NCBI GenBank assembly: GCA_964187785.1 | Contig: OZ076421.1 | Span: 35,092,001 to 35,156,000, forward strand | Length of the DNA: 64,000 bases | Origin: Amphiscolops sp. MND2022 | Taxonomy: Eukaryota | Direction: 5' to 3' | Shown: piece after piece, positions 15,029 to 32,875 of the stretch | Layout of the letters: every line of letters starts with the position of its first letter | Position numbering within the stretch: the stretch's first letter is position 1 | Translations under genes and position numbers: made by a program | Notes under the pieces: model-generated | Databases searched by the model: none | Seen by the model: the letters and a program-made list of their open reading frames with translations, nothing else | Told to the model about the DNA's origin: nothing

Positions 15029-16751
15029 CTAGGCAATAGACTGTTTTTCATTAAAAAATTGTAACATTTTGTAACTCTCCCGGCTAATGAGTTTTTGGCT
15101 GCAACAGTTCGCGAAAAATGGGGTCGAATTAGTCCAGCAATTTGAGATCGAGTTAACCGTAGGAAACCTTTTGAAGATCCAATGATCTAATTGTCGAAAA
15201 ACCATAAATTTGAAATAGAGTCTCTTTGAATATTTCTTCAATGTAAAGTTCAAAAACTGTTTCTATTTTATGCTTCATAAACAAGTCAGAAACTGTAACG
15301 CTACGTTTTCTGAAGAAAATTGTTCGTATAATTCGTAATTCGTTTTTGCATTAATAGAATCTCATTCAGCACTGAATGTCTTGTACCGCCGTATATGAGC
15401 AAACCGTACAGTATAATTGGTTTTGCATATGCTTGATAAAACCTTAAGAGAGCTTTCCGGGAAAAACAATAACGTGCCTTGTAGACCAAACCATTAAATT
15501 TAGCTAATCTTTTCTGGATACTCGCTATATGGCTATGAAAATTCAATCTTTTGTCGATACTAACGCCTAGGTACTAGAATTTTTCTACAATGTCTTTTTC
15601 GCCTGCTAAACCCTCAAGTTCGTCAATTTCCGTTGCGGTTATTGTTTTTCCAAAGGAAAAAATTGTACACTTAGATACGTTGACAGTCATTTTGTTAACC
15701 GAAAATCATTGATTCATGCTTTCTAGATCCAATTCTACATCTTTTGTTACATTTCTACAGCTTTTAGAAGTTACAATTGCGGTATCATCAGCAAAAAGAA
15801 CCATGTTTGAATTCTTACATGTTTCAGGCAAATCATTTATGTATATCAAAAACAAAAGTGGGCCCAAGATTGAAACTTGTGGAACTCCACAATCAATGCT
15901 CCTCGATGAAGACTTTTGATTACCCGAAAAAAACGAATTGTTCTCTGTCAGATAAGTAATCTCTGAGCAAATTTTCAATTTGACCGCGTAGTCCAAAGCT
16001 ATTTAGTTTTTTAATAAGAAGATTGTGATCAACGGTATCAAAGGCTTTTTTAAAATCAATGAAAGCTGCCAAGCCATAGTGTTTTTTGTCAATTGTTTTT
16101 CTCATAAATTCAGTGATTTCTGCAATTGCATGTGCACAAGAAAAATTTTCTCTAAAACCGAATTGTTTGGGAGTTAGTAGTTTATGCTTCGCCAAAAATT
16201 TTGTTATTCGTTTGTGAATGAGTTTTTCAAAAATTTTGCTCAGGGAAGTCAAAAGACTAATAGGGCGATAATTATCCGGTAGGGAAAAATCACCTTTCTT
16301 TAAAAGCGGAAGAACTTTCGCAATTTTCATAGACTTAGGAAACTTTGAATCTTTTATAAATCTCATTGAAAATATTGGCTAAAAATTGACTAATTGAAGA
16401 TGCCGCAAGCCTCAAAAGTTTAAAAGAGATGCCATCATGACCAGAAGAAATTTTGTTCTTTAGGTGTTTGATTATACTGTAAACTTCAGATGCATCTGTC
16501 TCGAAGAGAGCGAAAGTTTGAACAGGTCCGTCCGCGTCGAAGTCAACATTGGGTAAGGATTCACTACACTCATTTGCAAGTTTTTTTCCAATACTTACAA
16601 AAAAATCATTAAATTTTTCAACGTCTACTTCTCTTTGTTTCTTGGTTTCTTTCCCACAAAAATGGTTAAAACAGTTGAATAATTCTTTTGAATTGCACAC
16701 GTTTTTGATTTTTTTCGTCATAATAGGATCGTTTAGCTTTCCGATTTTCAC
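15029..16751 (-). pseudogene. LINE ORF2 reverse transcriptase (frameshifted)
   Basis: DNYRPISLL, QFGFR, DFKKAFDTVDH, GVPQ.SILGPLLFLIYINDL and FADDT motifs across several frames. Confidence 0.9.
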
Positions 16752-17727
16752 TGGTGACCGAGTTACGGAGTTTCTTGTAAACTAACTCGTTCTTTTTGCT
16801 AGCCTCTTTTACGTAAGAGGCATGCGCTTTATCACGTTTATGAATCAAAGATTTGATATGGTTTGTTACCCAATTTGATCTTTTCTTCGTAGCATCAAAA
16901 GTTTTGTGTGGAGCATACTTCTCGGAAGCTGAATTCAGAACACCGGTGAGGTACTCTAATTGTCTTTCAACTGTGTCACACTGACATTTACGAAGTGCTT
17001 GATCTGTGTAAAACAAAAATTTCAAATGATGATCTTCTTTAGAAAAGCCGGAAAAATCACGAAACTGAATAACATCATTATCGTTGCAATGATTTGTGTC
17101 ATATAAAATAGGAAATCTCAATGCATAGTGATCACTGATTTTGTATTTGAGAGTTTCAACTTTTATTTCTTTAGTTGATATGCAGAGGTCAATGCATTTC
17201 GAAGTTGACAGAGTCTCTCGAGTAGGCTCTTCATTCTGCACAGATAGTCCGAATGCTTCCAAACAAAGTTCTAGTTTTTTGGTTTTATAGTCTAGATTAT
17301 CAAGAACATCAATATTGAAGTCTCCTACGAGTATGGAATCTCCTTTCATTTCAAACAAATCAGTTAGAAGACAACCCATTTCATCAAAAAGGACAGCTTT
17401 AGCATCTGGTGGTCTATAAATCAGGCAGACATTCAGCGGATCTAAAGCGTCCCGATGGATTGTGACAATTACGTGTTCAATATTAGATTTACATTTGGTT
17501 GTAGTGTAATTCACGTCTTCTCTCGCGTAGAAAGCTAAACCGCCACCAAGTTTGTTCAGTCTATTTGATGTTTCAATTTCAGAGTAGTCGTCGAGCCAAT
17601 AAAGGTCAATAGGGTCATTTCCTGTCAACCAAGTTTCACAAAGGCAAATCAACACAGGTTTTACTTCAAAATCACCAAAAGTAGTAATTAACTGGTCATG
17701 ATGGCACCTAAGTGAACGTATGTTCAT
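16666..17727 (-). CDS. LINE ORF2 apurinic endonuclease domain
   Basis: MNIRSL, LCETWL, GGGLAFY, IYRPP, VGDFNID, CIDL and ISDHY motifs. Confidence 0.9.
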   Translation of the reverse strand: MNIRSLRCHHDQLITTFGDFEVKPVLICLCETWLTGNDPIDLYWLDDYSEIETSNRLNKLGGGLAFYAREDVNYTTTKCKSNIEHVIVTIHRDALDPLNVCLIYRPPDAKAVLFDEMGCLLTDLFEMKGDSILVGDFNIDVLDNLDYKTKKLELCLEAFGLSVQNEEPTRETLSTSKCIDLCISTKEIKVETLKYKISDHYALRFPILYDTNHCNDNDVIQFRDFSGFSKEDHHLKFLFYTDQALRKCQCDTVERQLEYLTGVLNSASEKYAPHKTFDATKKRSNWVTNHIKSLIHKRDKAHASYVKEASKKNELVYKKLRNSVTSENRKAKRSYYDEKNQKRVQFKRIIQLF

Positions 17728-18829
17728 GTAAAAATGTCTGAGGTTTTAAAAGTTTCCACAGATTCCATCCTTATTGCAAGCTGACAAAAACTGAAGAAAA
17801 AACGCAAAGTTCAGAGTATTAAAGAAGTATTTGCAGTCAAACTTTAGGAAGTTTATGTTTTAAGTGTAGTGAGGTTTAGGTTTCAAACTATTTGTCCATT
17901 ATCATTTTTGAAACTTTTTAGAAATTTGACTGCAAGTTCATCAATTTACAGTCCCTCGTCCATTGATGTCATTATCGCGATAGAAGTTTTTCGAAAATTG
18001 CAGGCCCTCCTCATCTGGTGACGACCGTATTCGTTTCAATAAAGATTTCATTTGATTTTCCACGAGTTTGGATGGTTCAGGCGTCATTGCAACTTTTTCA
18101 TGCTGCTTTTGAGATGGCTTGACTTTTCTAACGGCTATGTCTTTGATATCATGTACCGCTTTCACAGAATTCAACTTGACGCTTTTGTATCTTCCATCGA
18201 AACTTCTGGTAAAAGCTTTTACTTGGCAATTGTATGTAGTTGTTAGTGTGAAAAAAAGAAAGTGTGAAAAAAATTACATTACGTAAAGTTAACAATATGT
18301 CAAAGTTAGCCATAGTGGCAAAATAACTATTGCCATAATTCAGAATTTCATACAAATTTACAGTTGCTATTCAAATTCGTTCTTATCCGCACTGAGTTCG
18401 TCAGATATACCAGAATAATTTATTGGCAGAAAAATATCGCACTGCCACTCAACTGGTTGAAATTGAAGTTACATGTCAAAATTGACCAGTTTAATATCAC
18501 TTTTCTAGTCACGCGGTGTTTATTTTTTTTCAAGATAAAATTGACCCATGGTTGATACATTTTGTGCGGTTTCCAGAACACAGTTCCAGTGTAATTACCT
18601 CGTGAAGCTTCAAGATAATTTTTGTGGGAGTTGCAGTCTCTCAGCGGATGAAACTGTTTTCAAGGAACCTTGGGCTTTCAGACAAAAAATCAGAACTGTT
18701 AACGTTATATCCTCGATTTTTAAAATCTTGCCAGGTTGTTGTCGGAGTTCCCATCTGTTTAGTATACAACTTTCGTGTCTTTCCAACTTGACATACGATA
18801 ATGCTGTTCTGAGATATTTTTAATGTTAG

Positions 18830-19069
18830 TTTCAACATATGATTCATCCATTCATTTCTTACATTAGATTATTAGTTTCATTGACTCCCCAATGTTTCCA
18901 TTAATTATATTTTCGGTGCGATCAAGGTGTGATACAAACTTAAAGTTGATTTACCTTAATATTGTTGATTTCCATTACTAGCATTCAGTTGCCCAAATTT
19001 CTTTAAAGTTCTCTACAATGATTATCAAGAATGATGATTACAAATATCTTTTCGGTACATAACCTATAA
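18830..19069 (+). repeat. Copia 5' LTR (240 bp)
   Basis: Matches 23591-23814 with 8 substitutions and one 16-bp indel (counted by eye). Confidence 0.95.
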
Positions 19070-19084
19070 GGTTATGTGGCCCAG
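19070..19084 (+). promoter_or_regulatory. Copia primer-binding site GGTTATG(T)GGCCCAG
   Basis: Directly follows the 5' LTR and is the Drosophila copia-type GGTTATGGGCCCAG site with one extra T. Confidence 0.8.
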
Positions 19085-19622
19085 AACGATTCCACTGGAG
19101 TCTGTGATCCCAAGTGATTGAATGGGACATTAGAGGAGCAACATTTTCTGCGAGAAAAAATGACGATTTCAAAGAAAAGGTTGGAATTTGACAAAAAAAG
19201 AGTCTGCGGACAGTTGAAGAGAAAGTTCTACAATTGGATTTCACAACTTTACGAAAACTTTTTGAACCCATAAAGTATTACGGAAAACTTCAAACTTTCT
19301 CATTAATTAGTGCTAGATCCCTTCCCATATAAGAAACTCCCCTTTGAATTTTTTAAAAAAGATTTTTTTTATAACAAAATGCATTTCATTTCAGGATGAT
19401 GAAATCAAATAGAAATTAGAGTTTCAGACTCTGATTGACTAAATAGTGATAAAAAAAGTTCACTTTTGTTTTGTTAGCAGATTTGCCGTAGAGTAAATAG
19501 CTTGTCATCAATTCGAAATAAAAAAAATGGTTGCCTAATTTTTTTATTATTTGAATTTTGATTTTAAAATCAATAATATTTGTTATCTGAGTGTTTGTAG
19601 TGAGTGTTGCAAGCTTGATTGT

Positions 19623-22600
19623 CATGGCTGTGAGTGTCCAAACGAAGTTGGAAAGTATCAAATTTTCAGGGAGCGAGGATGACTTTGTTATGTTTTGTGA
19701 ACAGTTTGAAGCTAGAATGTATTTGTTGGGACTGTTTGGTGTGCTGAATGGAAGTGAGGGTGTTCAGTCTTGTAGACCGAAAGCAAGAAGTGGTTCATCG
19801 AGAGAAGAAAGGCAGGTGATGAAGCTGATGAAAAGGCGGCGGAAATTTTTGCTGACAAAAAGTATAAGATCTGGTGCGAATTGGTACAATGCTTGGATAA
19901 AAAGTCTCTGTTGTTCGGAAGAAGTTACAAAGATGATGGTCCAGCTGCGTGGAAAACCTTGTGCGACAGTTTTAAGAGTTTTGAGCGTCCTCGGTTGCAG
20001 CAGCTGATTGAGAAACTGACCTCACTTAGAAAAGATCAAAATGAAACCATTGTTGATTACATTACGAGAGCTGAAGACCTACAATACAACCTAAGTCAGG
20101 TGGACGAAGCGCTAAGCGAGCAAATGTTTATATCAATATTGTGCCCTCGTAAAGTTTACCAAGGAAACCAAAAGTTTGGACGAGGTAAAGAGGGATCTGA
20201 TAAACTTCGACACCGACCGAAGGAAACCAAGAGCAGAAGAAACCACGTTCCTCAGTCGAAACGAAGTTAAATGTCATCTCTGTGGAGGACCAGGTCACAA
20301 ATCATTTGAGTACACAAAAAACACGTACAGAGACCAAGCAAACTAAGAGTTTTGGACAACCTCGCGTCTGTTTCAAATGCAGTAAACCAGGACATATAGC
20401 GAAGTTTTGCCCATCCCAAGTGACTTCCCGCGATAGTAAGCATCGAATGCCGGAAAGATTTTGTAACCACTGCAAGAAAAAAGGACACACCTTAAGTACC
20501 TGTTTCAAATTGAGAGGAAACCAAAGCAACCAAGGAACCGATGAGGCAAGATTAGCCGTGCAACAGGATGACTCAGGCAAAAATGAGGAGGTCCAATTTT
20601 CATTCTTTGCAAATGAAGATATTGAAGTGAGTAAAAATGACCTGGTGGTAGATAGTGGTTGCACGAACCACATGATAAAAGACAGGAAACTGTTTGCCGA
20701 ACTGAATGAGGAGATAGAAGGAGTTGTTGGATGTGCCAACAAGACGGAGTCGAAACTGTGGGGAAAAGGCCGTGCTGTCTTCTGTGTAAAGGATAGCGAA
20801 GGTAACGCGAGAACAGTGGAGTTGCGGGATGCGTTGTACGTGCCGGCGTACGACAGAAACCTAGTGTCCGTAGCGCGACTGAAGAAAGTCGGGGTGGAGA
20901 TTCGTTTCGGAGAGGAAAACTCCTTAACGACGTCTGATGGAACCAAGTTTCACATAGAGCAAGAAAATAATTAGTTCGTTTGGAGAATAGTCCCTGATTT
21001 GAGAGTAACCAAGCATGAGACATGCCTATCCAGTAAACTAAGTAAGTGGCATGACCGACTGGGTCATAATAACTGGGAGGATTCGAAAAAGTTGAAGGAA
21101 CATGTTGTTGGAATGGATGTGTGTGAAAATGATGTGTTCGTGTGTGAAGTGTGTGAGGTTAACAAAGCCAAAAGAAGACCTGTACCCAAAGACTGCATTA
21201 CACGGGCCAAAGAGCCATTGGACTACGTACATTGTGACGTCCTAGGCCCAGTGTCACCAGTTTCGGTGGATGGTCATAAGTACGACATCGGATTCCAAGA
21301 TAGTTACAGTCGCTATGGTAAGATTTATTTCATGAAAAGCCGTGACGAAGTAGCAGCGAAATTTGAGCAGTACTGTGCAGATATAGGGAAACCAAGAGTT
21401 CTTGTAACCGACTGTGCAAAGAGTTCGTTGGCGGTGACATGAAGACATTTTGTAGGAACAAAGGCATCAGACAGGAAACATCTGCACCGTATACACCGGA
21501 GGAAAATGGGAAAATTAAGACAGTGTGGGGAACAATTTGCGGAATGGCCAGGTGTATGATCCATCGGGCCAACATGGACAAAGAATATTGGACATACGCA
21601 CTGAACTATGCATTTTACATCAAAAACTTGCTCCTACACTCAGCAACCAAGCAAACTCCATATGAGAGGATGTACGGTGAAAGGCCAAATTTAAGCTTTA
21701 AAAAAGTGTTTGGCTGCAAAGTTTACAGTTTTGTGGAGAAGCAATTCAGAGGAAAATTCGACGAGAGAGCAAAAGTGGGAGTCTTTCTAGGTTTTGCAGA
21801 GAACAGCAAACTGTACATAGTTGGATTAGAGGAAAACGGCGCAACCAAGAAGATCAAAACAAGAAGTGTGAGGTTTAATGAGGATGAGTTTTACTTTGGA
21901 ACCAAGGAAGGTCAACCAAGTGTGAACAACATCCCATCCAATCAAGTTCATGACACAGATGTTGCGGGCGATGAAGTGTCATTCAATGCAAAGAAGGAAC
22001 AAAGTCAGGTTAAGCTACCATGTTTCGTTCAAGAAGCCTTGAGTGATCCCCAGTGGAAGGAAGCAATGAAAACTGAATTCGATTCCTTCTGTAGTAACCA
22101 AGTTTGGACATTGGAGAAACTACCGAAAGGAACTAAGCCATTGAGAGGAAAATGGCATTTTGCGATGAAACACAACGAAGACGGAAGTTTCAAGAAGTGC
22201 AAAGCCAGATTTGTTGCGAAAGGTTTTGCACAAGTTGACGGTCGCGATTTCTTCGAACCCTATTCACCAACTGCGAGAATGTCTACAATACGGATTCTGT
22301 TGAACCTAGCAGCGCAGTATCAAGTAAAACCAAGACAGATGGACATCAAAACAGCATAATTGAATGCAGACATAGAAGAAAACATCTACATGGAACAACT
22401 GGAAGGCTTTGAAGTCAAAAAATAACGAAGGTAACCAAGTGTACTGTAAGTTGCGAAAGAGTTTATACGGACTTAAACAGTCTGGGCGCAACTGGTATTT
22501 AACACTAAAGATGTTCCCAGAAAAGAATTGGATTCCGAGCATGTATAAACGACAAAAGCTTGTTTGTGAGAGGTACTGGTGATGAGGTGTGTGTTGTGTG

Positions 22601-23550
22601 TGTGTGGGTGGATGATATGCTTTATTGGGGACGACAGGATGCTTTTGTTGGATGGTTCGAGAAGAAAGTGAAAGAACAGTTTGAAGTGAGTGACTGTAGT
22701 TCATTACATTGGTTCCTCAGGATGAAGATAGACGTTAGAGAAAGCGAAATCGCAGTAAGTCAGGAGAAGTATATTGACGATCTTTTGAGACGCTACAACA
22801 TGAAAGCGTGTAAACCAGTACAAAATCCGTTACCAGAAAATACCAAGTTCGAACGAGAAAGTAACAAAGAACAAGATTATGACGAACAAAGCATAATGGA
22901 ATGACGAGACTATAGAGGATTAGTTGGTAGTTTGAACTACTTAGCACTTAGCAGTCGTCCTGACATTGCTCATGCCTCTCACGCCTTAAGTAGTTTCCTA
23001 GAGCACCCATCAAAAGAACATTGGATGGCCGGAAAACGAATTTTGAGGTATTTGAAAGGAACCAAGCCACATGAACTCGTGTTTAGAATGTGTGAAGGTG
23101 GCGTGTATGTTTGTGCTTTCTCTGACGCAGATTGGGCCGGTGAGTTGACATCGAGAAAGAGTACAAGTGGCGTGTGTGTGAAATTGAACAGTGTGAGTGG
23201 TTGTGTGTGTTGGACCAGTAAGTTGCAAGCTAGTGTTGCTCTGTCAACAGCCGAAACTGAAGTCAATCCTTGCACTGTTGCTGTGCAAGAGTTGTCGTAT
23301 GTCTGTGGTGTATTGAGTGAGCTTGGAGTTGTTGTGGTGAAACCTGTGAGCGTGTTTGTTGACAATCAAGCATGCATAACTCTAAGTAAACACTCAATCC
23401 ATCATAACAAGACAAAACATAAAAACTTGCTTCCTTCAGGAAAAAACAGAAAAAGGCGAAATTTTACTGGAATTTTTACCTACAGATAGAATGCCGGCAG
23501 ATCTGCTAACAAAACCTTTAGGGAAAATAGAAACAGAACTTTTCACTAAC
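19623..23550 (+). pseudogene. Copia gag-pol (frameshifted, with stops)
   Basis: CCHC knuckles, VVDSGCTNHM protease, WHDRLGH..CEVC and HCDVLGP integrase, KARFVAKGF and VWVDDML RT, FSDADWAG RNase H. Confidence 0.93.
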
Positions 23551-23577
23551 ATTTTGCTGTGCCCTTGATATAGCACC

Positions 23578-23590
23578 GAAAAAGGGGGAG
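23578..23590 (+). promoter_or_regulatory. Copia polypurine tract
   Basis: GAAAAAGGGGGAG immediately before the 3' LTR. Confidence 0.85.
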
Positions 23591-23814
23591 TTTCAACATA
23601 TGATTCATCCATTCATTTCTTACATTAGATTATTCGTTTCATTGACTTCCCAATGTTTCCATTATTTATATTTTCGGTGCGATCAAGGTGTTGATTTACC
23701 TTAATATTGTTGATTTCCATTACTAGCATTCAGTTGCCCAAATTTCTTTAAAGTTCTGTACATTAATTAACAAGAATGATGATTACAAATATCTTTTCGG
23801 TACATAGCCTATAA
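23591..23814 (+). repeat. Copia 3' LTR (224 bp)
   Basis: Direct repeat of 18830-19069. Confidence 0.95.
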
Positions 23815-24947
23815 GTTAGCAAAACTTCATCCGAACTTTGACGTGTATTTCGAATTCTATTCCTGTCAAGAAAACGAAGGATATGCTTTTTAAATTGCCA
23901 TTTTGGACCCCTATATACAGATTTGAAACAGTTTTCAGATCTGTAGAGGCATGTTTAATTGTGTCTTTGATGATTCACAACATTGACTCAACAAAAACTC
24001 TAAACTATTTTCAACTTTACTTCCTGACTTTTCACTTTTGTTCAAACTCTTGATCATATTGGTGACTCAATAAATGAAATATAAGACGTTTCTTATATGT
24101 TTTGGCGCTCTTTCAACTTGACATTCAAAGCCAACCTTTTCGATGAAATTCTGATGCAACCTCAGAAGAAATTATTCTTTGGGTTTCTTTTCCGAGCTCT
24201 CTCTGGAAAACTTGGTTAGTCCATTCCAATTTTTCGTGGTTCCCAGCGCCAACAATTCATCTCCAGTACGAGGATTTTGCTTCCCACTCCAAAAATCAGC
24301 CTTTTCTGGAGTTTTTTCGCTTACTTCAAGCAGCAAACATCGTTATCGCATCAGTCAAAGGACAAAAATGGTTCTTCAACGAACAGAAGTTTTTTTTCGA
24401 ACGACAACAGAATTGACAATCCTTACAGCTACTCTCCACGTGTACTACAACCTAGCTAGCCACTTCAAAGTCTCCATACGCGAAAACTTTTTCAGCCTTT
24501 ACCTAGCTGCATTGAGTAGAGAGTAGGGAGTGGTTTTTTGAGGAATTTTTTCCTTAACACATATTAGGGTGATACAAGTGTAAAACGTCCTTTATTAACC
24601 TTCTCTAATTAGAGAACGAAAAGTAGCTATAAAAAAATTCTCGGAACGCACACCTCTGACTCAAAACGCCTTAGTCGTTTTTGTTAGATTTTTTCTCCAC
24701 ATTCCATTTCACGACTTTTTTCAAAGTAACGTCCAGTCCCGTCCAGATTCTTCAACTACCGTCCTGCAAAGGTAAGTAACAGACTGTTCGTTTCGTACGG
24801 TGCCCGTACAGACCCAAACCGTCGCTCGTTCGAAATTTCAACGCGGAACAGGAAAAAACTTTCATTTTGCTCTCCTTGAATTTCTTTTTTTTACGGTTCG
24901 CAGCGGTTCCCTTTCCGTAAGCTGTCTGACTTCTACTACGATCAACG

Positions 24948-27272
24948 ATGGTGAACCCGAAGATCGACACTCTCAAAAATCACTTCCGACTGCACGAGTG
25001 CAAGTTTGAGAATACTTCGAACTACCTTGCATCGAAGTTGACCTCGGACAACAACATCCAGCGCCTGCGTGAAATTCTTGCGCAGTTGCAAACTATCGCC
25101 GCCAAACTCGAAGAAATCTCCGAACAGATGTCTGCCTTCATGACGCTCGATGATTTGGAGCCATTTCTCCAGAAGTCAGCCGACTTCTCTTTAATTCTTA
25201 TACACTATGATGACAAAATCGACAATCTAACCCAGAGCGGCCCAAGTCGCTCTTCATCAACCTGTGCTCCCTTCGAGCGCCGATGCGAAGATTCACCTTC
25301 AGCACCCACCAATCCAGCCTCACAACAACAGCGGGATTTTGCAACCGCACCCAACAACACGACACGCCTGCCGCAGCTTTTCATCAACTCCGGACAACCT
25401 GTAACTCGCGCTACATCACAACCACAACTTCCCACGCATATCATGGACATGACGGGTCCCGAGCTGTCCCGCCACTTAGGAAGTTTGGATAACTCTCATG
25501 TTTCTACAACCGCTCATCAGGACCCTTCCTACACCGAAGACATGCAAAGAAACACCGAGTTGGATCCGGAATAACAGGACTTGGCCTCTGAAGCCATTCC
25601 TTCACAGATCTGTGAACCGCATTTGGACAACTCAGCCGTCACTCTCCCTATCCAGCGACAACCACCGCAGTTGGACAACTCAGTCGTCACTCTCCCTCAC
25701 CAACAGCAACCACTAAGTATTGCCTTTTATTTGCCACATCAGTCACCCTCAACAACTGCAACTAGCCGCTTAGTCTACACCACCAACTATCATCTACCAA
25801 CTTTCGACACGGTTTTGACAAACAGCGTCCGTCCATCATATCAGGTGGTCAATCCCCACTTTCCGTTACCCCACATGCAAAGCGCCAATCTTCAACATCT
25901 TCCACCTTCATCAGTTCCGCCTCCAGCTGAACCGCTAACACAATTTTTTCCGTCGTCCAATCACCAGACTTTTCTGCCTGTAACGCAACACATTGCCGCT
26001 CACCCTGACATTTGCTTTGCCACCAACACCGAATGGATAACACGGACTTTTCCTAACCCAGCCACCGAGTGTCCTCCAATGTTACAACCTCATTGTATCA
26101 ACCAGCCGATTCAGCAGTCAGTTGGATCAACCCCTACCGTACCAGTTGTTTCAACCCAACACCCGTTCGCCGCCTTTTGTATAAAACTGCCGCCTGTTCA
26201 GATTCCGAAATTCGATGGGGATCCTCTCGCCTTTTATAATTGGATCAACATTTTCAAAGCATATGTTCACGGAAACAGATCGATCTCACAAACTCACCGA
26301 ATCACTTACCTGCAAAACTCAGTTTCCGGAAAGGCGAAAGACCTCATCCGAGGTTACTCTTGTAACCCTGCTTTCTACAACGTCGCGCTAGCGGAACTTG
26401 AGTCTCGCTTCGGTTCACCGCAACACGTAACAGCCTACATTCGCTGTCTCGAATCATGGCAAAAAATGTCATCGCTAAACCTCGTATCGTTTTCCACATT
26501 TCTGAAACAGCTGATTCAAACCTTCCACAATTTCCATTTCACTGCTGATCTGCATTCCGCAACTGTACTTACCCTCGCCAAAGAAAAACTCCCGCACCAT
26601 TTGTTGCTCAAATGGACTGAACATACAGTTAGAAACAACATGTCAACACCTACTCTGCTCGATTTCCAACAATGGTTGGATATTCAAGCAAAGGTACTAG
26701 AAACACTCGAACCAGCTTGTGATAGATCCGTTGACAACGAACGTTCTTCGAGCACCACCGCACCAAAGACATCGAAAATCAAATCCCTTGCTTGCCCAAT
26801 CTGTGCTGCTCCGCACTTTGTCTACAAATGCCCCCAGTACACGTCCGCTTCCATGAACGAAAAACTTCAAAAGGTCAAAGACCTCAAGTTATGCTACAAT
26901 TGTTTGGACAACTCCCACTTGAAACCCGACTGCCCATCCAAAATTCGCTGTCAAGAACCCAACTGTGGTGCTTCTCACCACACCTCTCTCCACACTCAAC
27001 TCCGAAAAGACCTTCGCAATGTCAACGAAAAAAATCTCTCGACTTACAAAAAGTCAGTTTCTAGCAAATCCGATCTACAAAATAACGAACCCGATGCCGG
27101 AACGTCAACGCAATTTCAACATTTCAACGCTCCCAGAGTCAAAAATCCTCCCGACAACCGCAGTTTAACGCCGCCGCCATCGACAAATTTCCCAAAGATC
27201 TTTTTTCCGTTCTTCAAATTATCCCCGTTTCCATCATCAATGGAGACAAAACGTTTGATACATATGCCTTGA
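24948..27272 (+). pseudogene. BEL/Pao gag (DUF1759-type core plus three Cys/His fingers)
   Basis: KLPPVQIPKFDGDP, CPICAAPHFVYKC, CYNCLDNSHLKPDC and CQEPNCGASHHTSLH. One internal stop near 25574. Confidence 0.9.
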
Positions 27273-30200
27273 TTGATCCCGGTAGCACAGGAACGTACAT
27301 CGTAAACCATATCTCGAGTTTTCTCAGCTTGAAAACTGGCAAGGAATATAAACTAGATGTACAGTTTCTGAGCCTGTCTCGTTCCTTGTCAGTCTCTGTC
27401 ACATCATTTGACATTGCACCGTACGCCGACAATGACAACAAATTTCACGTACAACACGCTTTTTACACCTCATATATCAACCTTCCCCCTGCCGATACCT
27501 CCGAACTCAATGATATTTGTCAAAATTTCCCCGAGCTCTGTCACATAAAGTTCCCAGACATCAATCAGGGAAAAATTGGTGTCCTCCTCGGCACCGCTTG
27601 TGTCCCCTTCACTCATTCGTTAGAGTGGATTCGCGGAGCTCACAACTGTCCTTCCGGTATTCGAACGGAGCTCGGCTGGACAATTTCCGGCGAGTTCCGT
27701 CACTCCTCCCGAAAGAAATCTACCGCCACGAAGCACCTGCTTTTCTTTGCTTCCCATGAAACCTCGCCTCAATCAGCTTCCACCGACATTCTCGAATACT
27801 ACTGGAATGTTGAAAAAATAGCCACTGAACCAGCGCAAAAAGATGTTTTGTCTACACATGACAAAGAAGCCCTTCAGATACTTCAAGACACCTGCCGCCA
27901 CAATGGCGAAAGGTACGAAATAGGACTTCCTTGGAAGCGCGACACGCCACTACCGAACAATTAATTCGCCGCATTAAGTCAACTCCGCAGCCTTGAAAAA
28001 CGCTTCCGAGAACACCCGCAGAAGAAAGCCAAACTCGACGAAACCTTGCAGAAGGATCTCGAAAAAGGTTACGTGAAACAAGTCAAAATGCAACATCCGC
28101 CGCCTCCGCGAATTTGGTACCTCCCCACGCATCCCGTCGAGGATCCCAATAAACCTGGCAAAGTCCGCCGAGTAGCCAACGCAGCCTCGAAGTTCAAAGG
28201 AGTCTCGCTCAATAACGCTCTTCTAACCGGTCCAGACCTGTTAGCTAATTTGCTTGAAATCATTCTCCGTTTCCGCAAACATCTTGTCGGTGTCTTGGCC
28301 GACATCGAAGGTATGTTTATGCAAGTTGCCATCCGTGAAGAAGACCAGTCTGCGCTACGCTTCCTCTGGTTAGAAGATGGTATCATTCGCCAATATCAAT
28401 ATGCTCGCCTCATCTTTGGCGCCACGTGCTTCCCTTGCTGCGCCATATTCGCTCTACACCGTTGCGCTGCCGACCTCTCCGACCGCTCTCCCGACGTTTA
28501 TGAAGCAGTTTTAAACAACTTTTACATGGATGACTTCATAATGTCGTTTGCCACCGCTGAAGCCGCTCGCCGCCTCGCCTCGAATCTACGCACTGTTCTC
28601 CAACACGGAGGGTTCCGCCTTACCAAGTTCGTTTCGAATAATCCCGCCGCTCTTACTGCTCTTCCCGAAGAAGACATGGAAATCATTCAGAACACAACGA
28701 AAGTTCTCGGTCAGACTTGGTGTCATTCGAATGACACGTTCACAGCTTCAACGCCGAAAACAATCGACCCGCCGCAAACGCTTCGACAACTGTTCAGCAT
28801 GGTTTCCTCCATTTTCGATCCTATTGGATTGCTCGCTCCTTTCTTGATACAACTCAAAGTCATTCTCCAGAACCTCTGGAAGTGAGGACAAACATGGAAC
28901 CAGCCCGTTCCTGACGATCTCGAACCTCGCATCAACAAGTTGGCCACACAATACGCCACCATGCCTGACATCTCCGTACCGCGTCTAATATCACCTCTGC
29001 TCACCTCTGCAGAACTTCACGTTTTCACCGACGCTTCCATCTCCGCATTTTCCGCCGTTATCTACGCACGTCAACCGCCGTCTGACACCACTCCCGCTCG
29101 TCTCGTTTTCGTTCTTGGCAAGAGCCGTAGTAAGGCTCCATCAAGCAACGAAGTGTTCTAAAACTGGAACTCGAAGCCTCCGTTTTGGGAGTCCGTTTAC
29201 TCCGCACCGTTCTAAACGCTTTCGAATGTAACTTTCGCCAAGTTTTTTTTGGACCGATAGTTGCGTCGTGTTGGATTGGATCCAACACCAAAAGAATCTA
29301 AAACCATTCGTTGCTCATCGAGTGAGCAGAATCACTCAACACACAAAACCGAACCAGTGGAACTACGTTCCAACCGAATTGAACCCCGCTGATCACGGAA
29401 CTCGCGGTTTGAAACCCTCAGACATTTCCTCCAAATGGACAAAAGGACCCGATTTCCTTTTGAAGCCTGTAAAATATTGGCCTCAAGAATACCCGCAAAC
29501 CTCGATAGGTCAATCTGCACTGCAACCGTCGTCGTGTCGCAAACCGGCCTCGTTGATATTTCAAGATTTTCTTCTTGGAATCGTTTACTCAAAACAACCG
29601 CAATCGTCCGCTTCTTCATCCGCCGTCTCCGAGATCCGTCGTCGGCGCCAACTTTAACCGCTAATGATTTTCAACTAGCAACCGAAACACTTCTCCGTCA
29701 ATTGCAACTAGTGTCTTTTCCAGCCGTTCTTGGAAAACTTCTTCGAAAGAAATCATTGTCGTCCAAAGACAAACTCCTTCCTTTGAACCCTTTCATTGAC
29801 GAACGCCAAATTATACGCTCTTCCGGACGTCTACAATACGCACAGTTACCCGCAACTACGCGCATGCCCGTCGTCCTAGATGCCCAGTACGCAATAACCC
29901 GCCTCCTCATAGTACACTTTCACGAAATCTGCCACCACGCCGGTCCCGAATACGTCAAGTCATTTCTGCAACAACGTTATTTCATTTTTGGCGTCCGTGC
30001 CGCCCTGCGCACTATCAGTTATCGTTACTTCCAATGCCGCCGCTTTCGCGCCGAAAACGTCGAGCCAATGATGGCGCCCTTACCACGATGCCGATTTCCA
30101 TCCCCTGATACGCCATATCCGTTCGCCAACTCCGGAGTCGATGCGTTTGGACCATTCTTCATTGTCAACGGAAAACGAACTGAGAAACACTACAGCCTGA

Positions 30201-31012
30201 TCTTCACCTGCCTCGTCACCCGCGCCTGTCATTTGGAACCTTGTCCCGCCTTGACCACGGACTCCTTCATCAACGCCTTCCGACGCTTCATTGCCAGAAG
30301 AGGACAGCCGCAGTACATTCGTTCTGACAATGGAAACAATTTCGTTGGTGCCTGTCGTGAACTTCAGGAAGCCTTGAACGCAGGTATCCGCACAGCTCTG
30401 CAAACTCCTCCCCTAGCACCCGAGATGGAATGGCACCTCAACCCGCCGTTTGCGCCGCACTTTGGTGGGGCGTGGGAACGCCTTATCCAAACGGCCAAGA
30501 AAACTTTACTCTTCTTCCTAGGTTCCAGAAAACTGACTCTAGAACTGATTCACACAATCCTTGCCGAAACAGAACTCATGCTCAACTCACGACCTCTGAC
30601 CCATGTTGCAGACTACCCTGACAACGAAGAACCTCTGACTCCCAACCAGTTCCTTCTCCACAGACCCTATGCAAACCTGCCACCTGGAGTTTTCCAAGAT
30701 TCCAGTTATCAGCTCACGCAGAAGTCTTGGAAAGAAACCCAAAAACTCGTCAACCATATTTGGAAGAGACTGCTAACTGAATACATTCCCACACTGCACC
30801 ACCGGTCCAAGTGGAATCAACAACTACCACCAATTACTGTTGAACTTGTGTGGGTGCTTCGAGACATCACTCCTCGTGGGATTTGGCCTATTGGGAGAGT
30901 GGAAGCTGTTTTCCCTGTGCGAGATGGACAGACCCGAGTGTGTTCTGTAAAGACAGCTTACGGAACTTTCGAGGGCCCCGCCGTCTCTCTTTCCCGCGTT
31001 TTCGCCCCGTGA
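27269..31012 (+). pseudogene. BEL/Pao pol: protease, RT, RNase H, integrase, DUF5641-type C-terminus
   Basis: LIDPGST, WYLPTHPV, YMDD, LHVFTDAS, GVDAFGP, RSDNGNNF, GGAWERLI and IWKRLLTEYIPTL motifs. Confidence 0.93.
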
Positions 31013-31433
31013 CGGTTCGTTCGCCACGACTCATTTCCGGAGAGATTTTTCTCGGTCCGCTCTCGTCTCCCCTCTCTTCTCCCTGCAGCTTGGAGGGCTG
31101 GAGCATGTCAATGATGATTCACAATATTGACTCAACATTAACTCTAAACTATTTTTAACTTTACTTCCTGACTTTTCACTTTTGTTCAAATTCTTGATCA
31201 TTTTGGTGACTCAATAAATGAAATATAAGACGTTTCTTATAAATTGAGATAATCCTTTTTCATCTTCCAATAAACGCTTTCAAAAGACCCGGTTTTTGCT
31301 TGAGGACGCACTGTAGCATTATACAAAAATTTTATCACAGTGCCACTGAGCCTCTTGTTGAAACATTGAGCTAAAATAACGTTTTGCCTACCTCCGAGGG
31401 AACTACTCATTTATTGGTAACTTCCAAAACCAG

Positions 31434-32875
31434 CGCATTTTCCGCCGTTATCTACGCACGTCAACCGCCGTCTGACACCACTCCCGCTCGTCTCGTTTTC
31501 GTTCTTGGCAAGAGCCGTAGTAAGGCTCCATCAAGCAACGAAGTGTTCTAAAACTGGAACTCGAAGCCTCCGTTTTGGGAGTCCGTTTACTCCGCACCGT
31601 TCTAAACGCTTTCGAATGTAACTTTCGCCAAGTTTTTTTGGACCGATAGTTGTGTCGTGTTGGATTGGATCCAACACCAAAAGAATCTAAAACCATTCGT
31701 TGCTCACCGAGTGAGCAGAATCACTCAACACACAAAACCGAACCAGTGGAACTACATTCCAACCGAATTGAACCCCGCTGATCACGGAACTCGCGGTTTT
31801 GAAACCCTCAGACATTCCCTCCAAATGGACAAAAGGACCCGATTTCCTTTTGAAGCCTGTAAAATATTGGCCTCAAGAATGCCCGCAAACCTCGATAGGT
31901 CAATCTGCACTGCAACCGTCGTCGTGTCGCAAACCGGCCTCGTTGATATTTCAAGATTTTCTTCTTGGAATCGTTTACTCAAAACAACCGCAATCGTCCG
32001 CTTCTTCATCCGCCGTCTCCGAGATCCGTCGTCCGCGCCAACTTTAACCGCTAATGATTTTCAACTAGCAACCGAAACACTTCTCCGTCAATTGCAACTA
32101 GTGTCTTTTCCAGCCGTTCTTCCAAGAGTTTTCCAAGATTCCAGTTATCAGCTCACGCAGAAGTCTTGGAAAGAAACCCAAAAACTCGTCAACCATATTT
32201 GGAAGAGACTGCTAACTGAATACATTCCCACACTGCACCACCGGTCCAAGTGGAATCAACAACTACCACTAATTACTGTTGAACTTGTGTGGGTGCTTCG
32301 AGACTTCACTCCTCGTGGGATTTGGCCTATTGGGAGAGTGGAAGCTGTTTTCCCTGTGCGAGATGGACAGACCCGAGTGTGTTCTGTAAAGACAGCTTAC
32401 GGAACTTTCGAGGGCCCCGCCGTCTCTCTTTCCCGCGTTTTCGCCCCGTGACGGTTCGTTCGCCACGACTCATTTCCGGAGAGATTTTTCTCGGTCCGCT
32501 CTCGTCTCCCCTCTCTTCTCCCTGCAGCTTGGGGGGCTGGAGCATGTCAATGATGATTCACAACATTGACTCAACATTAACTCTAAACTATTTTCAACTT
32601 TACTTCCTGACTTTTCACTTTTGTTCAAACTCTTGATCATATTGGTGACTCAATAAATGAAATATAAGACGTTTCTTATAAATTGAGATAATCCTTTTTC
32701 ATCTTCCAATAAACGCTTTCAAAAGACCCGGTTTTTGCTTGAGGACGCACTGTAGCATTATACAAAAATTTTATCACAGTGCCACTGAGCCTCTTGTTGA
32801 AACATTGAGCTAAAATAACGTTTTGCCTACCTCCGAGGGAACTACTCATTTATTGGTAACTTCCAAAACCAGCGA
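31434..32875 (+). repeat. Tandem duplicate of the BEL 3' part (with internal deletion), third LTR (32545-32680) and 195 bp of flank
   Basis: 31434-32121 copies 29044-29731; 32122-32680 copies about 30683-31241; 32681-32875 copies 31242-31436. Confidence 0.95.

What the first reader, a model, noticed from the sequence alone, without database searches (positions are those of the whole stretch)
18825..23819. Copia element whose LTRs begin TT and end AA instead of TG...CA
Seen: the 5' LTR starts TTTCAAC at 18830 right after GTTAG, the 3' LTR starts TTTCAAC right after the PPT, both end CCTATAA, the PBS begins immediately after, and GTTAG follows the 3' LTR. The termini are symmetric (AA-3' on both strands) and identical in both LTRs, so they were present at reverse transcription. 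Established: LTR integrases almost always process a CA-3' end, and TT...AA is not among the non-canonical termini I know of. Inference: this may be a Copia lineage with altered integrase end specificity that standard TG...CA-filtered LTR finders would miss.
Basis: partly seen in the sequence, partly recalled or inferred. Interest (0 to 1): 0.7.

Follow-up and report, generated by a model that had tools for sequence, protein, structure and literature searches.

The report
Copia retrotransposon family with TT...AA ends
This is a worn copy of a real, multi-copy Copia-type jumping gene whose repeat ends read TT...AA instead of the textbook TG...CA, and in this animal genome related Copia families appear to keep only the outermost T and A fixed.

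Summary
The window element (18830-23814) has a 240-nt and a 224-nt LTR that start TTTCAAC and end CCTATAA, flanked by GTTAG on both sides. Thirteen independent insertions of the family, one a solo LTR, show the same ends with 5-bp target duplications of different sequence, which rules out a shifted boundary. Genome-wide, 24 of 28 left ends read TT and none TG; 25 of 32 right-end matches read AA and one CA.

The element is a Ty1/copia retrotransposon. Its primer site matches the 5' half of the host initiator tRNA-Met, as in Drosophila copia. The polypurine tract and primer site both abut the LTRs, so the cDNA should be blunt and need no end trimming.

A sister family (about 60% protein identity) has TT...TA ends, with a subvariant ending AA. 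Of 100 listed sites carrying the same primer site, 96 have A at the LTR end; the base before it is C 18, G 35, A 19, T 24. A penultimate base that integration does not read fits this better than one lineage retuned to AA.

I found TT...AA in no motif list I read, but non-TG/CA Copia are known. Earlier first-reader notes of this scan flag TT...AA and TA...GA Copia elsewhere in this genome. Interest is modest.

The parts
18825..18829 (+). Left target-site duplication, GTTAG
   Evidence: It is identical to 23815-23819. Other insertions have 5-bp duplications of different sequence.
18830..19069 (+). 5' LTR, 240 nt, starts TTTCAAC and ends CCTATAA
19070..19097 (+). Primer binding site, complementary to the 5' half of the host initiator tRNA-Met up to the anticodon loop. 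This copy has one extra T inside the 14-nt core.
   Evidence: Host tRNA-Met genes were found and read. Other copies carry the uninterrupted core GGTTATGGGCCCAG.
19609..23565 (+). Broken gag-pol frame. Pfam domains in order are Retrotran_gag_2, zf-CCHC, Pol_BBD, gag_pre-integrs, SH3_retrovirus and RVT_2, followed by an RNase H-side tail without a Pfam hit. The frame is split over at least 7 reading-frame pieces.
   Evidence: A copy with one open frame shows the full domain set including rve.
23578..23590 (+). Polypurine tract GAAAAAGGGGGAG, directly abutting the 3' LTR
   Evidence: The same tract precedes every 3' LTR of the family.
23591..23814 (+). 3' LTR, 224 nt (16-nt deletion relative to the 5' LTR), starts TTTCAAC and ends CCTATAA
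23815..23819 (+). Right target-site duplication, GTTAG

Best explanation
The window holds an old, frame-broken copy of an autonomous Ty1/copia LTR retrotransposon family. The family has roughly 25-50 near-identical copies, 240-nt LTRs and 5-bp target duplications. Minus-strand synthesis is primed on a site complementary to the 5' half of the host initiator tRNA-Met, which is the geometry of Drosophila copia and the hemiviruses. That site abuts the 5' LTR and the polypurine tract abuts the 3' LTR. The finished cDNA should therefore be blunt and already end ...AA-3' on both strands, so that the integrase joins it without trimming. This step is inferred. In this genome's Copia elements with that primer site, only the terminal A (outermost T...A) is fixed and the penultimate base drifts among C, G, A and T. 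TT...AA is thus one state of a position that integration does not read, not the mark of a specially retuned enzyme.
For: Boundaries and duplications come, with genome-wide end counts. Three copies have uninterrupted 1336-1338-aa frames. LTR-pair divergence runs from 0 to 4.7%. Older subfamilies, 73-88% identical in the C-terminal 251 residues of the polyprotein, keep the same ends. The 14-nt primer-site core is perfectly complementary to host tRNA-Met up to the anticodon loop, and 25 of 27 positions match beyond it. The sister family's LTR is TTTCAG...CTCTTA. Three 5' junctions predicted from its 3' flanks were found exactly where expected. Five insertions of that family end ...CTCTAA. In the census of 107 non-tRNA sites with the same primer site (control 2), 96 of the 100 listed have A next to it, with penultimate C 18, G 35, A 19 and T 24. 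At least 8 distinct end sequences finish in AA, and GA/CA variants occur within one end type. From the literature: Ty1 cDNA needs no 3' processing and Ty1 integrase specificity was reported as limited to A:T at the blunt end (PMC8487063). In plants only the first T of TG..CA is invariable (10.1101/137141).
Against: Only families A and B have boundaries proven by target duplications. For the other end types in the census I assume that the LTR abuts the primer site. The left end is known for two families only, and both read TT. No family A copy with CA ends was seen to spread, so a preference for AA within this family is not excluded. Recombinant Ty1 integrase did not use AA ends at physiological metal concentrations (PMC8487063), so some change in the enzyme relative to Ty1 is likely. 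No integrase comparison tied to end type could be made. No RNA or cDNA data were available.
Confidence: 0.7

Rival explanations
1. This Copia lineage has an integrase whose end specificity has shifted from CA-3' to AA-3', co-evolved with its LTR ends.
For: AA/TT ends are stable across all sampled copies and across older subfamilies. Ty1 integrase uses AA poorly (PMC8487063), so some enzyme adaptation is plausible.
Against: The sister family uses TA on the right end and has an AA subvariant present in both LTRs of several insertions, so both states transpose. All four penultimate bases occur next to the same primer site across the genome.
Confidence: 0.2
2. The boundary is misplaced. The true LTR would be one base longer or shorter (for example ending TATAAG with a 4-bp TTAG duplication), or the ends would be canonical in other copies.
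For: In the window copy alone, AG precedes both LTRs and G follows both, so the boundary there is ambiguous.
Against: Thirteen insertions have 5-bp duplications whose first and last bases vary. No copy starts TG.
Confidence: 0.01
3. The cDNA is longer than the integrated form, and the integrase trims it at a subterminal signal, as retroviruses do, so TT...AA is a post-processing product.
For: This is the general retroviral model. The exact RNase H cut at the polypurine tract was not observed.
Against: The polypurine tract and the tRNA-complementary site both abut the LTRs with no spacer. Ty1 shows the same layout and needs no processing (PMC8487063).
Confidence: 0.07

Closest known systems
Drosophila copia (genus Hemivirus, Pseudoviridae)
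   Same: It has a single gag-pol frame with the order PR-IN-RT-RH, short LTRs and 5-bp duplications. Its primer site abuts the LTR and is complementary to an internal part of initiator tRNA-Met, giving half-tRNA priming (PMC5371799, PMC8515867). From my memory, the 14-nt core GGTTATGGGCCCAG is the same as in copia.
   Different: Drosophila Copia-group elements all have TG/CA ends (PMC5408687), whereas this family has TT...AA. The host here is a different animal, and protein relatedness to copia itself was not measured.
Yeast Ty1 and its integrase
   Same: Ty1 has blunt cDNA ends with no 3' processing and 5-bp duplications. Its integrase was reported to need only an A:T pair at the end, and AA ends are usable in high Mn2+ (PMC8487063).
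   Different: All 60 genomic Ty1 LTRs end CA, and AA is not used at physiological metal levels (PMC8487063). Ty1 primes from the 3' end of the tRNA.
Plant non-TGCA Copia elements (Tos17 TG..GA, AtRE1 TA..TA, TARE1 TA..CA and the seven LTR_retriever types)
   Same: They are mostly Copia, with short LTRs (mean 272 bp against 240 bp here), 5-bp duplications and a fixed first T (10.1101/137141).
   Different: TT..AA and TT..TA are not among the seven types. These elements are plant lineages, and relatedness was not tested.
Drosophila errantiviruses (gypsy, ZAM, Idefix) with AGT...AnT ends
   Same: This is an animal LTR element group whose ends depart from TG/CA (PMC5408687).
   Different: They belong to the Ty3/gypsy superfamily, have 4-bp sequence-specific targets and different terminal trinucleotides.

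Membership tests
Ty1/copia (Pseudoviridae) | Polyprotein order gag - protease - integrase - reverse transcriptase - RNase H | tested here: met
   One search finds Retrotran_gag_2, zf-CCHC, Pol_BBD, gag_pre-integrs, rve, SH3_retrovirus and RVT_2 in that order. One search finds the same order, in pieces, in the window copy.
Ty1/copia (Pseudoviridae) | LTRs with an adjacent tRNA-iMet primer site and polypurine tract, and a 5-bp target duplication | tested here: met
Ty1/copia (Pseudoviridae) | Terminal inverted dinucleotides TG...CA | tested here: not met
   TT...AA appears in all sampled copies. This is a usual feature, not a strict requirement, since non-TGCA Copia are known (10.1101/137141).
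Hemivirus-type Copia | Primer site complementary to an internal segment (5' half up to the anticodon loop) of initiator tRNA-Met, not to its 3' end | tested here: met
   The core GGTTATGGGCCCAG is the reverse complement of host tRNA-Met positions ending in the anticodon loop. The criterion is from PMC8515867.
Hemivirus-type Copia | Actual use of a cleaved half-tRNA as primer | not testable with these tools
   This needs cDNA or primer analysis from particles.
Hemivirus-type Copia | RT/IN phylogeny grouping with copia or Ty5 | not tested
   No named reference sequences were available. The nearest database proteins (45-58% identity) are unnamed.
Non-TGCA Copia as catalogued by LTR_retriever | [quoted passage not shown] | tested here: not met
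   The motif here is TT..AA, and the sister family has TT..TA. The list is from PMC8220671 and 10.1101/137141.
Non-TGCA Copia as catalogued by LTR_retriever | Short LTRs, a 5-bp duplication and a conserved first T | tested here: met
   LTRs are 240 and 246 nt, duplications are 5 bp, and T is first at 25 of 28 left ends.

The most novel reading that the evidence does not exclude
A whole radiation of half-tRNA-primed Copia families in one animal genome uses all four NA-3' ends (CA, GA, AA, TA), with switches inside single families. Their integrases would then read only the terminal A. This would be a natural series for asking what the conserved CA does in integration, and it would mean that a large share of this genome's Copia elements is invisible to TG/CA-filtered annotation.
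Probability: 0.5. Interest if true: 0.5.

Novelty: new variant of a known kind. Interest (0 to 1): 0.35.

Why it matters
There is a practical consequence. LTR finders that require TG..CA, or the eight-motif LTR_retriever list, would discard this family, its sister family and probably most of the half-tRNA-primed Copia elements of this genome. In the census only 18 of 100 listed ends read CA. Repeat annotation and age estimates would then be biased.

There is also a mechanistic point. The conserved CA is treated as the integrase recognition signal of LTR elements. A set of closely related, recently active families that differ only in the penultimate base is a natural experiment for asking whether blunt-end Copia integrases read that base at all.

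Tried and rejected
I could not fetch DNA around the closest foreign relatives (45-58% identity), so nothing is known about the ends of this clade in other species.
I could not cut out full copies of the more distant Copia families (about 55% and 46% identity). Family B's 5' junctions were instead tested by predicting them from the 3' flanks and searching for that pattern.
- **Polypurine-tract census** meant to sample left ends of other families gave counts close to the control (53 against 39) and was dropped.
- **Reads**: only short-read contigs from one study were available. No empty-site joint and no RNA run were found, so neither insertion polymorphism nor expression could be judged. The depth ratio suggests roughly 25-50 copies.
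- **The listing of cluster members** gave no organism names for the nearest relatives. Only fish names appeared, for distant ones.
- **Integrase residue inspection** was not done. Without end types for the relatives it could not discriminate between the models.
- **Shifted boundary** with a 4-bp duplication is rejected.

Full report
**1. What is in the window**

The 5' LTR is 18830-19069 and the 3' LTR is 23591-23814. Both begin TTTCAAC and end CCTATAA, and GTTAG flanks the element on both sides. The purine run GAAAAAGGGGGAG (23578-23590) touches the 3' LTR. A tRNA-like complement starts at 19070, directly after the 5' LTR. In this copy alone the boundary is ambiguous by a base or two, because AG precedes both LTRs and G follows both. 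The two LTRs differ at 8 of 224 aligned bases plus one 16-nt indel (K2P 0.037).

The coding region is split over at least seven frame pieces. These still match, in order, Retrotran_gag_2, zf-CCHC, Pol_BBD, gag_pre-integrs, SH3_retrovirus and RVT_2. It is an old, dead Ty1/copia copy.

**2. Are the ends real?**

The window lies on a 58-Mb contig of a 1.07-Gb assembly. The LTR finds at least 40 scored copies out of 122 candidates. Every sampled copy begins TTTCAAC and ends CCTATAA apart from a few point-mutated ones.

Twelve LTR pairs and one solo LTR carry perfect 5-bp target duplications of unrelated sequence: GATTC, CCCTC, GTCAT, CTAAC, CATTC, CGTAA, GGTTT, GGCTG, AGTAT, GTCTT, TCGAG, GTTGT and the window's GTTAG. 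One more pair is imperfect. The first and last bases of the duplication vary, so the LTR cannot include the neighbouring G or AG.

Genome-wide pattern counts agree:
- **Left end**: after the polypurine tract the LTR starts TT at 24 of 28 sites, AT at 3, TC at 1 and never TG. The control count was 0.
- **Right end**: before the primer site the LTR ends AA at 25 of 32 matches and CA at 1. This short pattern has a control of 15, so the odd rows may be chance.

**3. State of the family**

- LTR-pair divergence ranges from 0 to 4.7%.
- Three copies show an uninterrupted 1336-1338-aa frame, and most others have one to a few stops.
- One open frame carries the full Copia domain set, including the integrase core.
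- Short-read contig depth over the element is about 25-50 times that of the flanks.
- Older subfamilies, 73-88% identical in the C-terminal 251 residues of the polyprotein, keep the same LTR ends. The TT...AA state has therefore persisted through a long diversification.

**4. How the ends are made**

The host initiator-type tRNA-Met was located and read. The reverse complement of its first 39 bases starts GGTTATGGGCCCAG. Many copies carry exactly this 14-mer directly after the LTR, and complementarity continues at 25 of 27 positions. The window copy and many others have one extra T inside the core.

The element therefore has the half-tRNA primer-site geometry described for Drosophila copia and used to define hemiviruses (PMC5371799, PMC8515867). 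The primer site and the polypurine tract both abut the LTRs. The inferred linear cDNA is then blunt and already ends AA-3' on both strands. This is the situation of Ty1, which needs no 3' processing (PMC8487063). Blunt ends and direct joining are inferences, because no cDNA was observed.

**5. Is this a lineage with a retuned integrase?**

A sister family with about 60% protein identity and many open copies has a 246-nt LTR reading TTTCAG...CTCTTA. I predicted its three 5' junctions from the 5 bases following three 3' LTRs (AAATG, TATCC, TGTTG). All three were found at the expected coordinates. Its ends are therefore TT...TA with 5-bp duplications.

Five other insertions of that family end ...CTCTAA next to the primer site. 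For at least three of them, LTR matches at both ends of the same element stop two bases short of the query end. This indicates that the AA variant itself transposed.

I then took a census of every genomic site with the tRNA-half primer-site core that is not a tRNA gene. There are 107 sites against a control of 2, and 100 are listed. At 96 of the 100 the base abutting the primer site is A. The base before it is:

| Penultimate base | Sites |
|---|---|
| C | 18 |
| G | 35 |
| A | 19 |
| T | 24 |

At least eight distinct end sequences finish in AA. One abundant end type occurs as both GA (28 sites) and CA (3 sites).

Boundaries are proven by duplications for only two families. For the rest I assume abutment. 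With that caveat, the picture is a terminal A that is fixed and a penultimate base that drifts. An earlier follow-up note of this scan reached the same view for a TA...GA Copia 14.5 Mb away on this chromosome (s1-151978). I did not re-test that element, but GA-ending types are the commonest in my census.

**6. What is known**

- In plants, seven non-TGCA types are catalogued, 89% of the elements are Copia, their LTRs are short (mean 272 bp), and only the first T is invariable (10.1101/137141). TT..AA and TT..TA are not among the seven.
- An automated annelid survey lists TGAA and TTAT but not TTAA (PMC8220671).
- Drosophila Copia-group elements are all TG/CA. Only errantiviruses depart from this, with AGT...AnT (PMC5408687).
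- LTR models treat TG...CA as the most conserved LTR feature (PMC3601003).
- For Ty1, integrase specificity was reported as limited to A:T at the blunt end. AA ends work in high Mn2+ but not at physiological metal levels, and all 60 genomic Ty1 LTRs end CA (PMC8487063).

A natural family that has spread with AA ends is therefore a new end variant of a known phenomenon, not a new kind of element.

**7. Limits**

I could not examine relatives in other species or the more distant Copia families here.
- Only contigs from one study were available for read laying, so insertion polymorphism and expression remain open.
Notes of this scan report dinoflagellate-type pieces in the assembly and an animal gene in this window. 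From these I infer an animal host with dinoflagellate symbionts.

**8. Surroundings**

The element sits in repeat-rich DNA. Remnants of a non-LTR retrotransposon (endonuclease and RVT_1) lie at 15920-17727 on the minus strand. A BEL/Pao element lies from about 23962 to 32680.

**Verdict**

The best reading is a hemivirus-type Copia family in a group where only the outermost T...A is constrained (confidence 0.7). Novelty: new variant of a known kind. Interest: 0.35.

Noticed in passing
window 23962-32680: A BEL/Pao LTR retrotransposon (DUF1759, Peptidase_A17, RVT_1, rve, DUF5641) starts 147 bp downstream of the Copia. Its 136-nt LTR reads TGTC...CTTATA with a 5-bp duplication AATTG, so its ends are TG...TA and also non-canonical. 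Its 3' part, including the LTR and flank, is tandemly duplicated with spacing 1439.
   Followed up: partly
window 15920-17727 (minus strand): Remnants of a non-LTR retrotransposon: an AP-endonuclease domain and RVT_1 in separate open frames.
   Followed up: no
G000:C8:62053156-62082195 and beyond (loci L050-L053): A tandem array of several hundred tRNA-Met (CAT) genes with a period of about 210-215 bp. The pattern has 393 genome-wide matches, almost all in this array. Array copies differ slightly in the T arm from a dispersed copy in L048.
   Followed up: partly
window 19070-19084 and loci L001-L047: Two primer-site forms coexist among otherwise similar copies. One is the exact tRNA complement GGTTATGGGCCCAG and the other has an extra T (GGTTATGTGGCCCAG). 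This might reflect copying of the primer site from the tRNA during plus-strand synthesis, as opposed to inheritance from the template.
   Followed up: no
window 19609-20319; loci L027, L030, L038, L022, L046: The N-terminal gag region of the window copy and of several other copies is only 53-69% identical to that of the open-frame copy, while pol is 89-95% identical. This suggests gag-mosaic subfamilies or recombination.
   Followed up: no
G000:C1:101001978-101006916 and C1:101035640-101040578 (L003-L006, L036): Two copies with the same duplication CGTAA lie 33.7 kb apart, which indicates a segmental duplication containing the element. The LTRs of the copy examined (L036) are identical although its frame is broken.
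   Followed up: no
G000:C3:27428031-27430237 (L011, L019): Two 3' LTRs of the family face each other about 2 kb apart. Their outer flanks (GAAAG and CTTTC) are reverse complements of each other, as if an inversion had occurred between LTRs of one insertion.
   Followed up: no
G000:C11:21592580, C2:30295328, C6:57528039: Three 3' LTRs of the family start ATTCAAC instead of TTTCAAC. In the one element examined (L047) the 5' LTR still starts with T.
   Followed up: no
L022:21-491: The C-terminal end of a distant Copia polyprotein (35% identity) lies just upstream of a family A insertion, which may be a nested or adjacent insertion.
   Followed up: no
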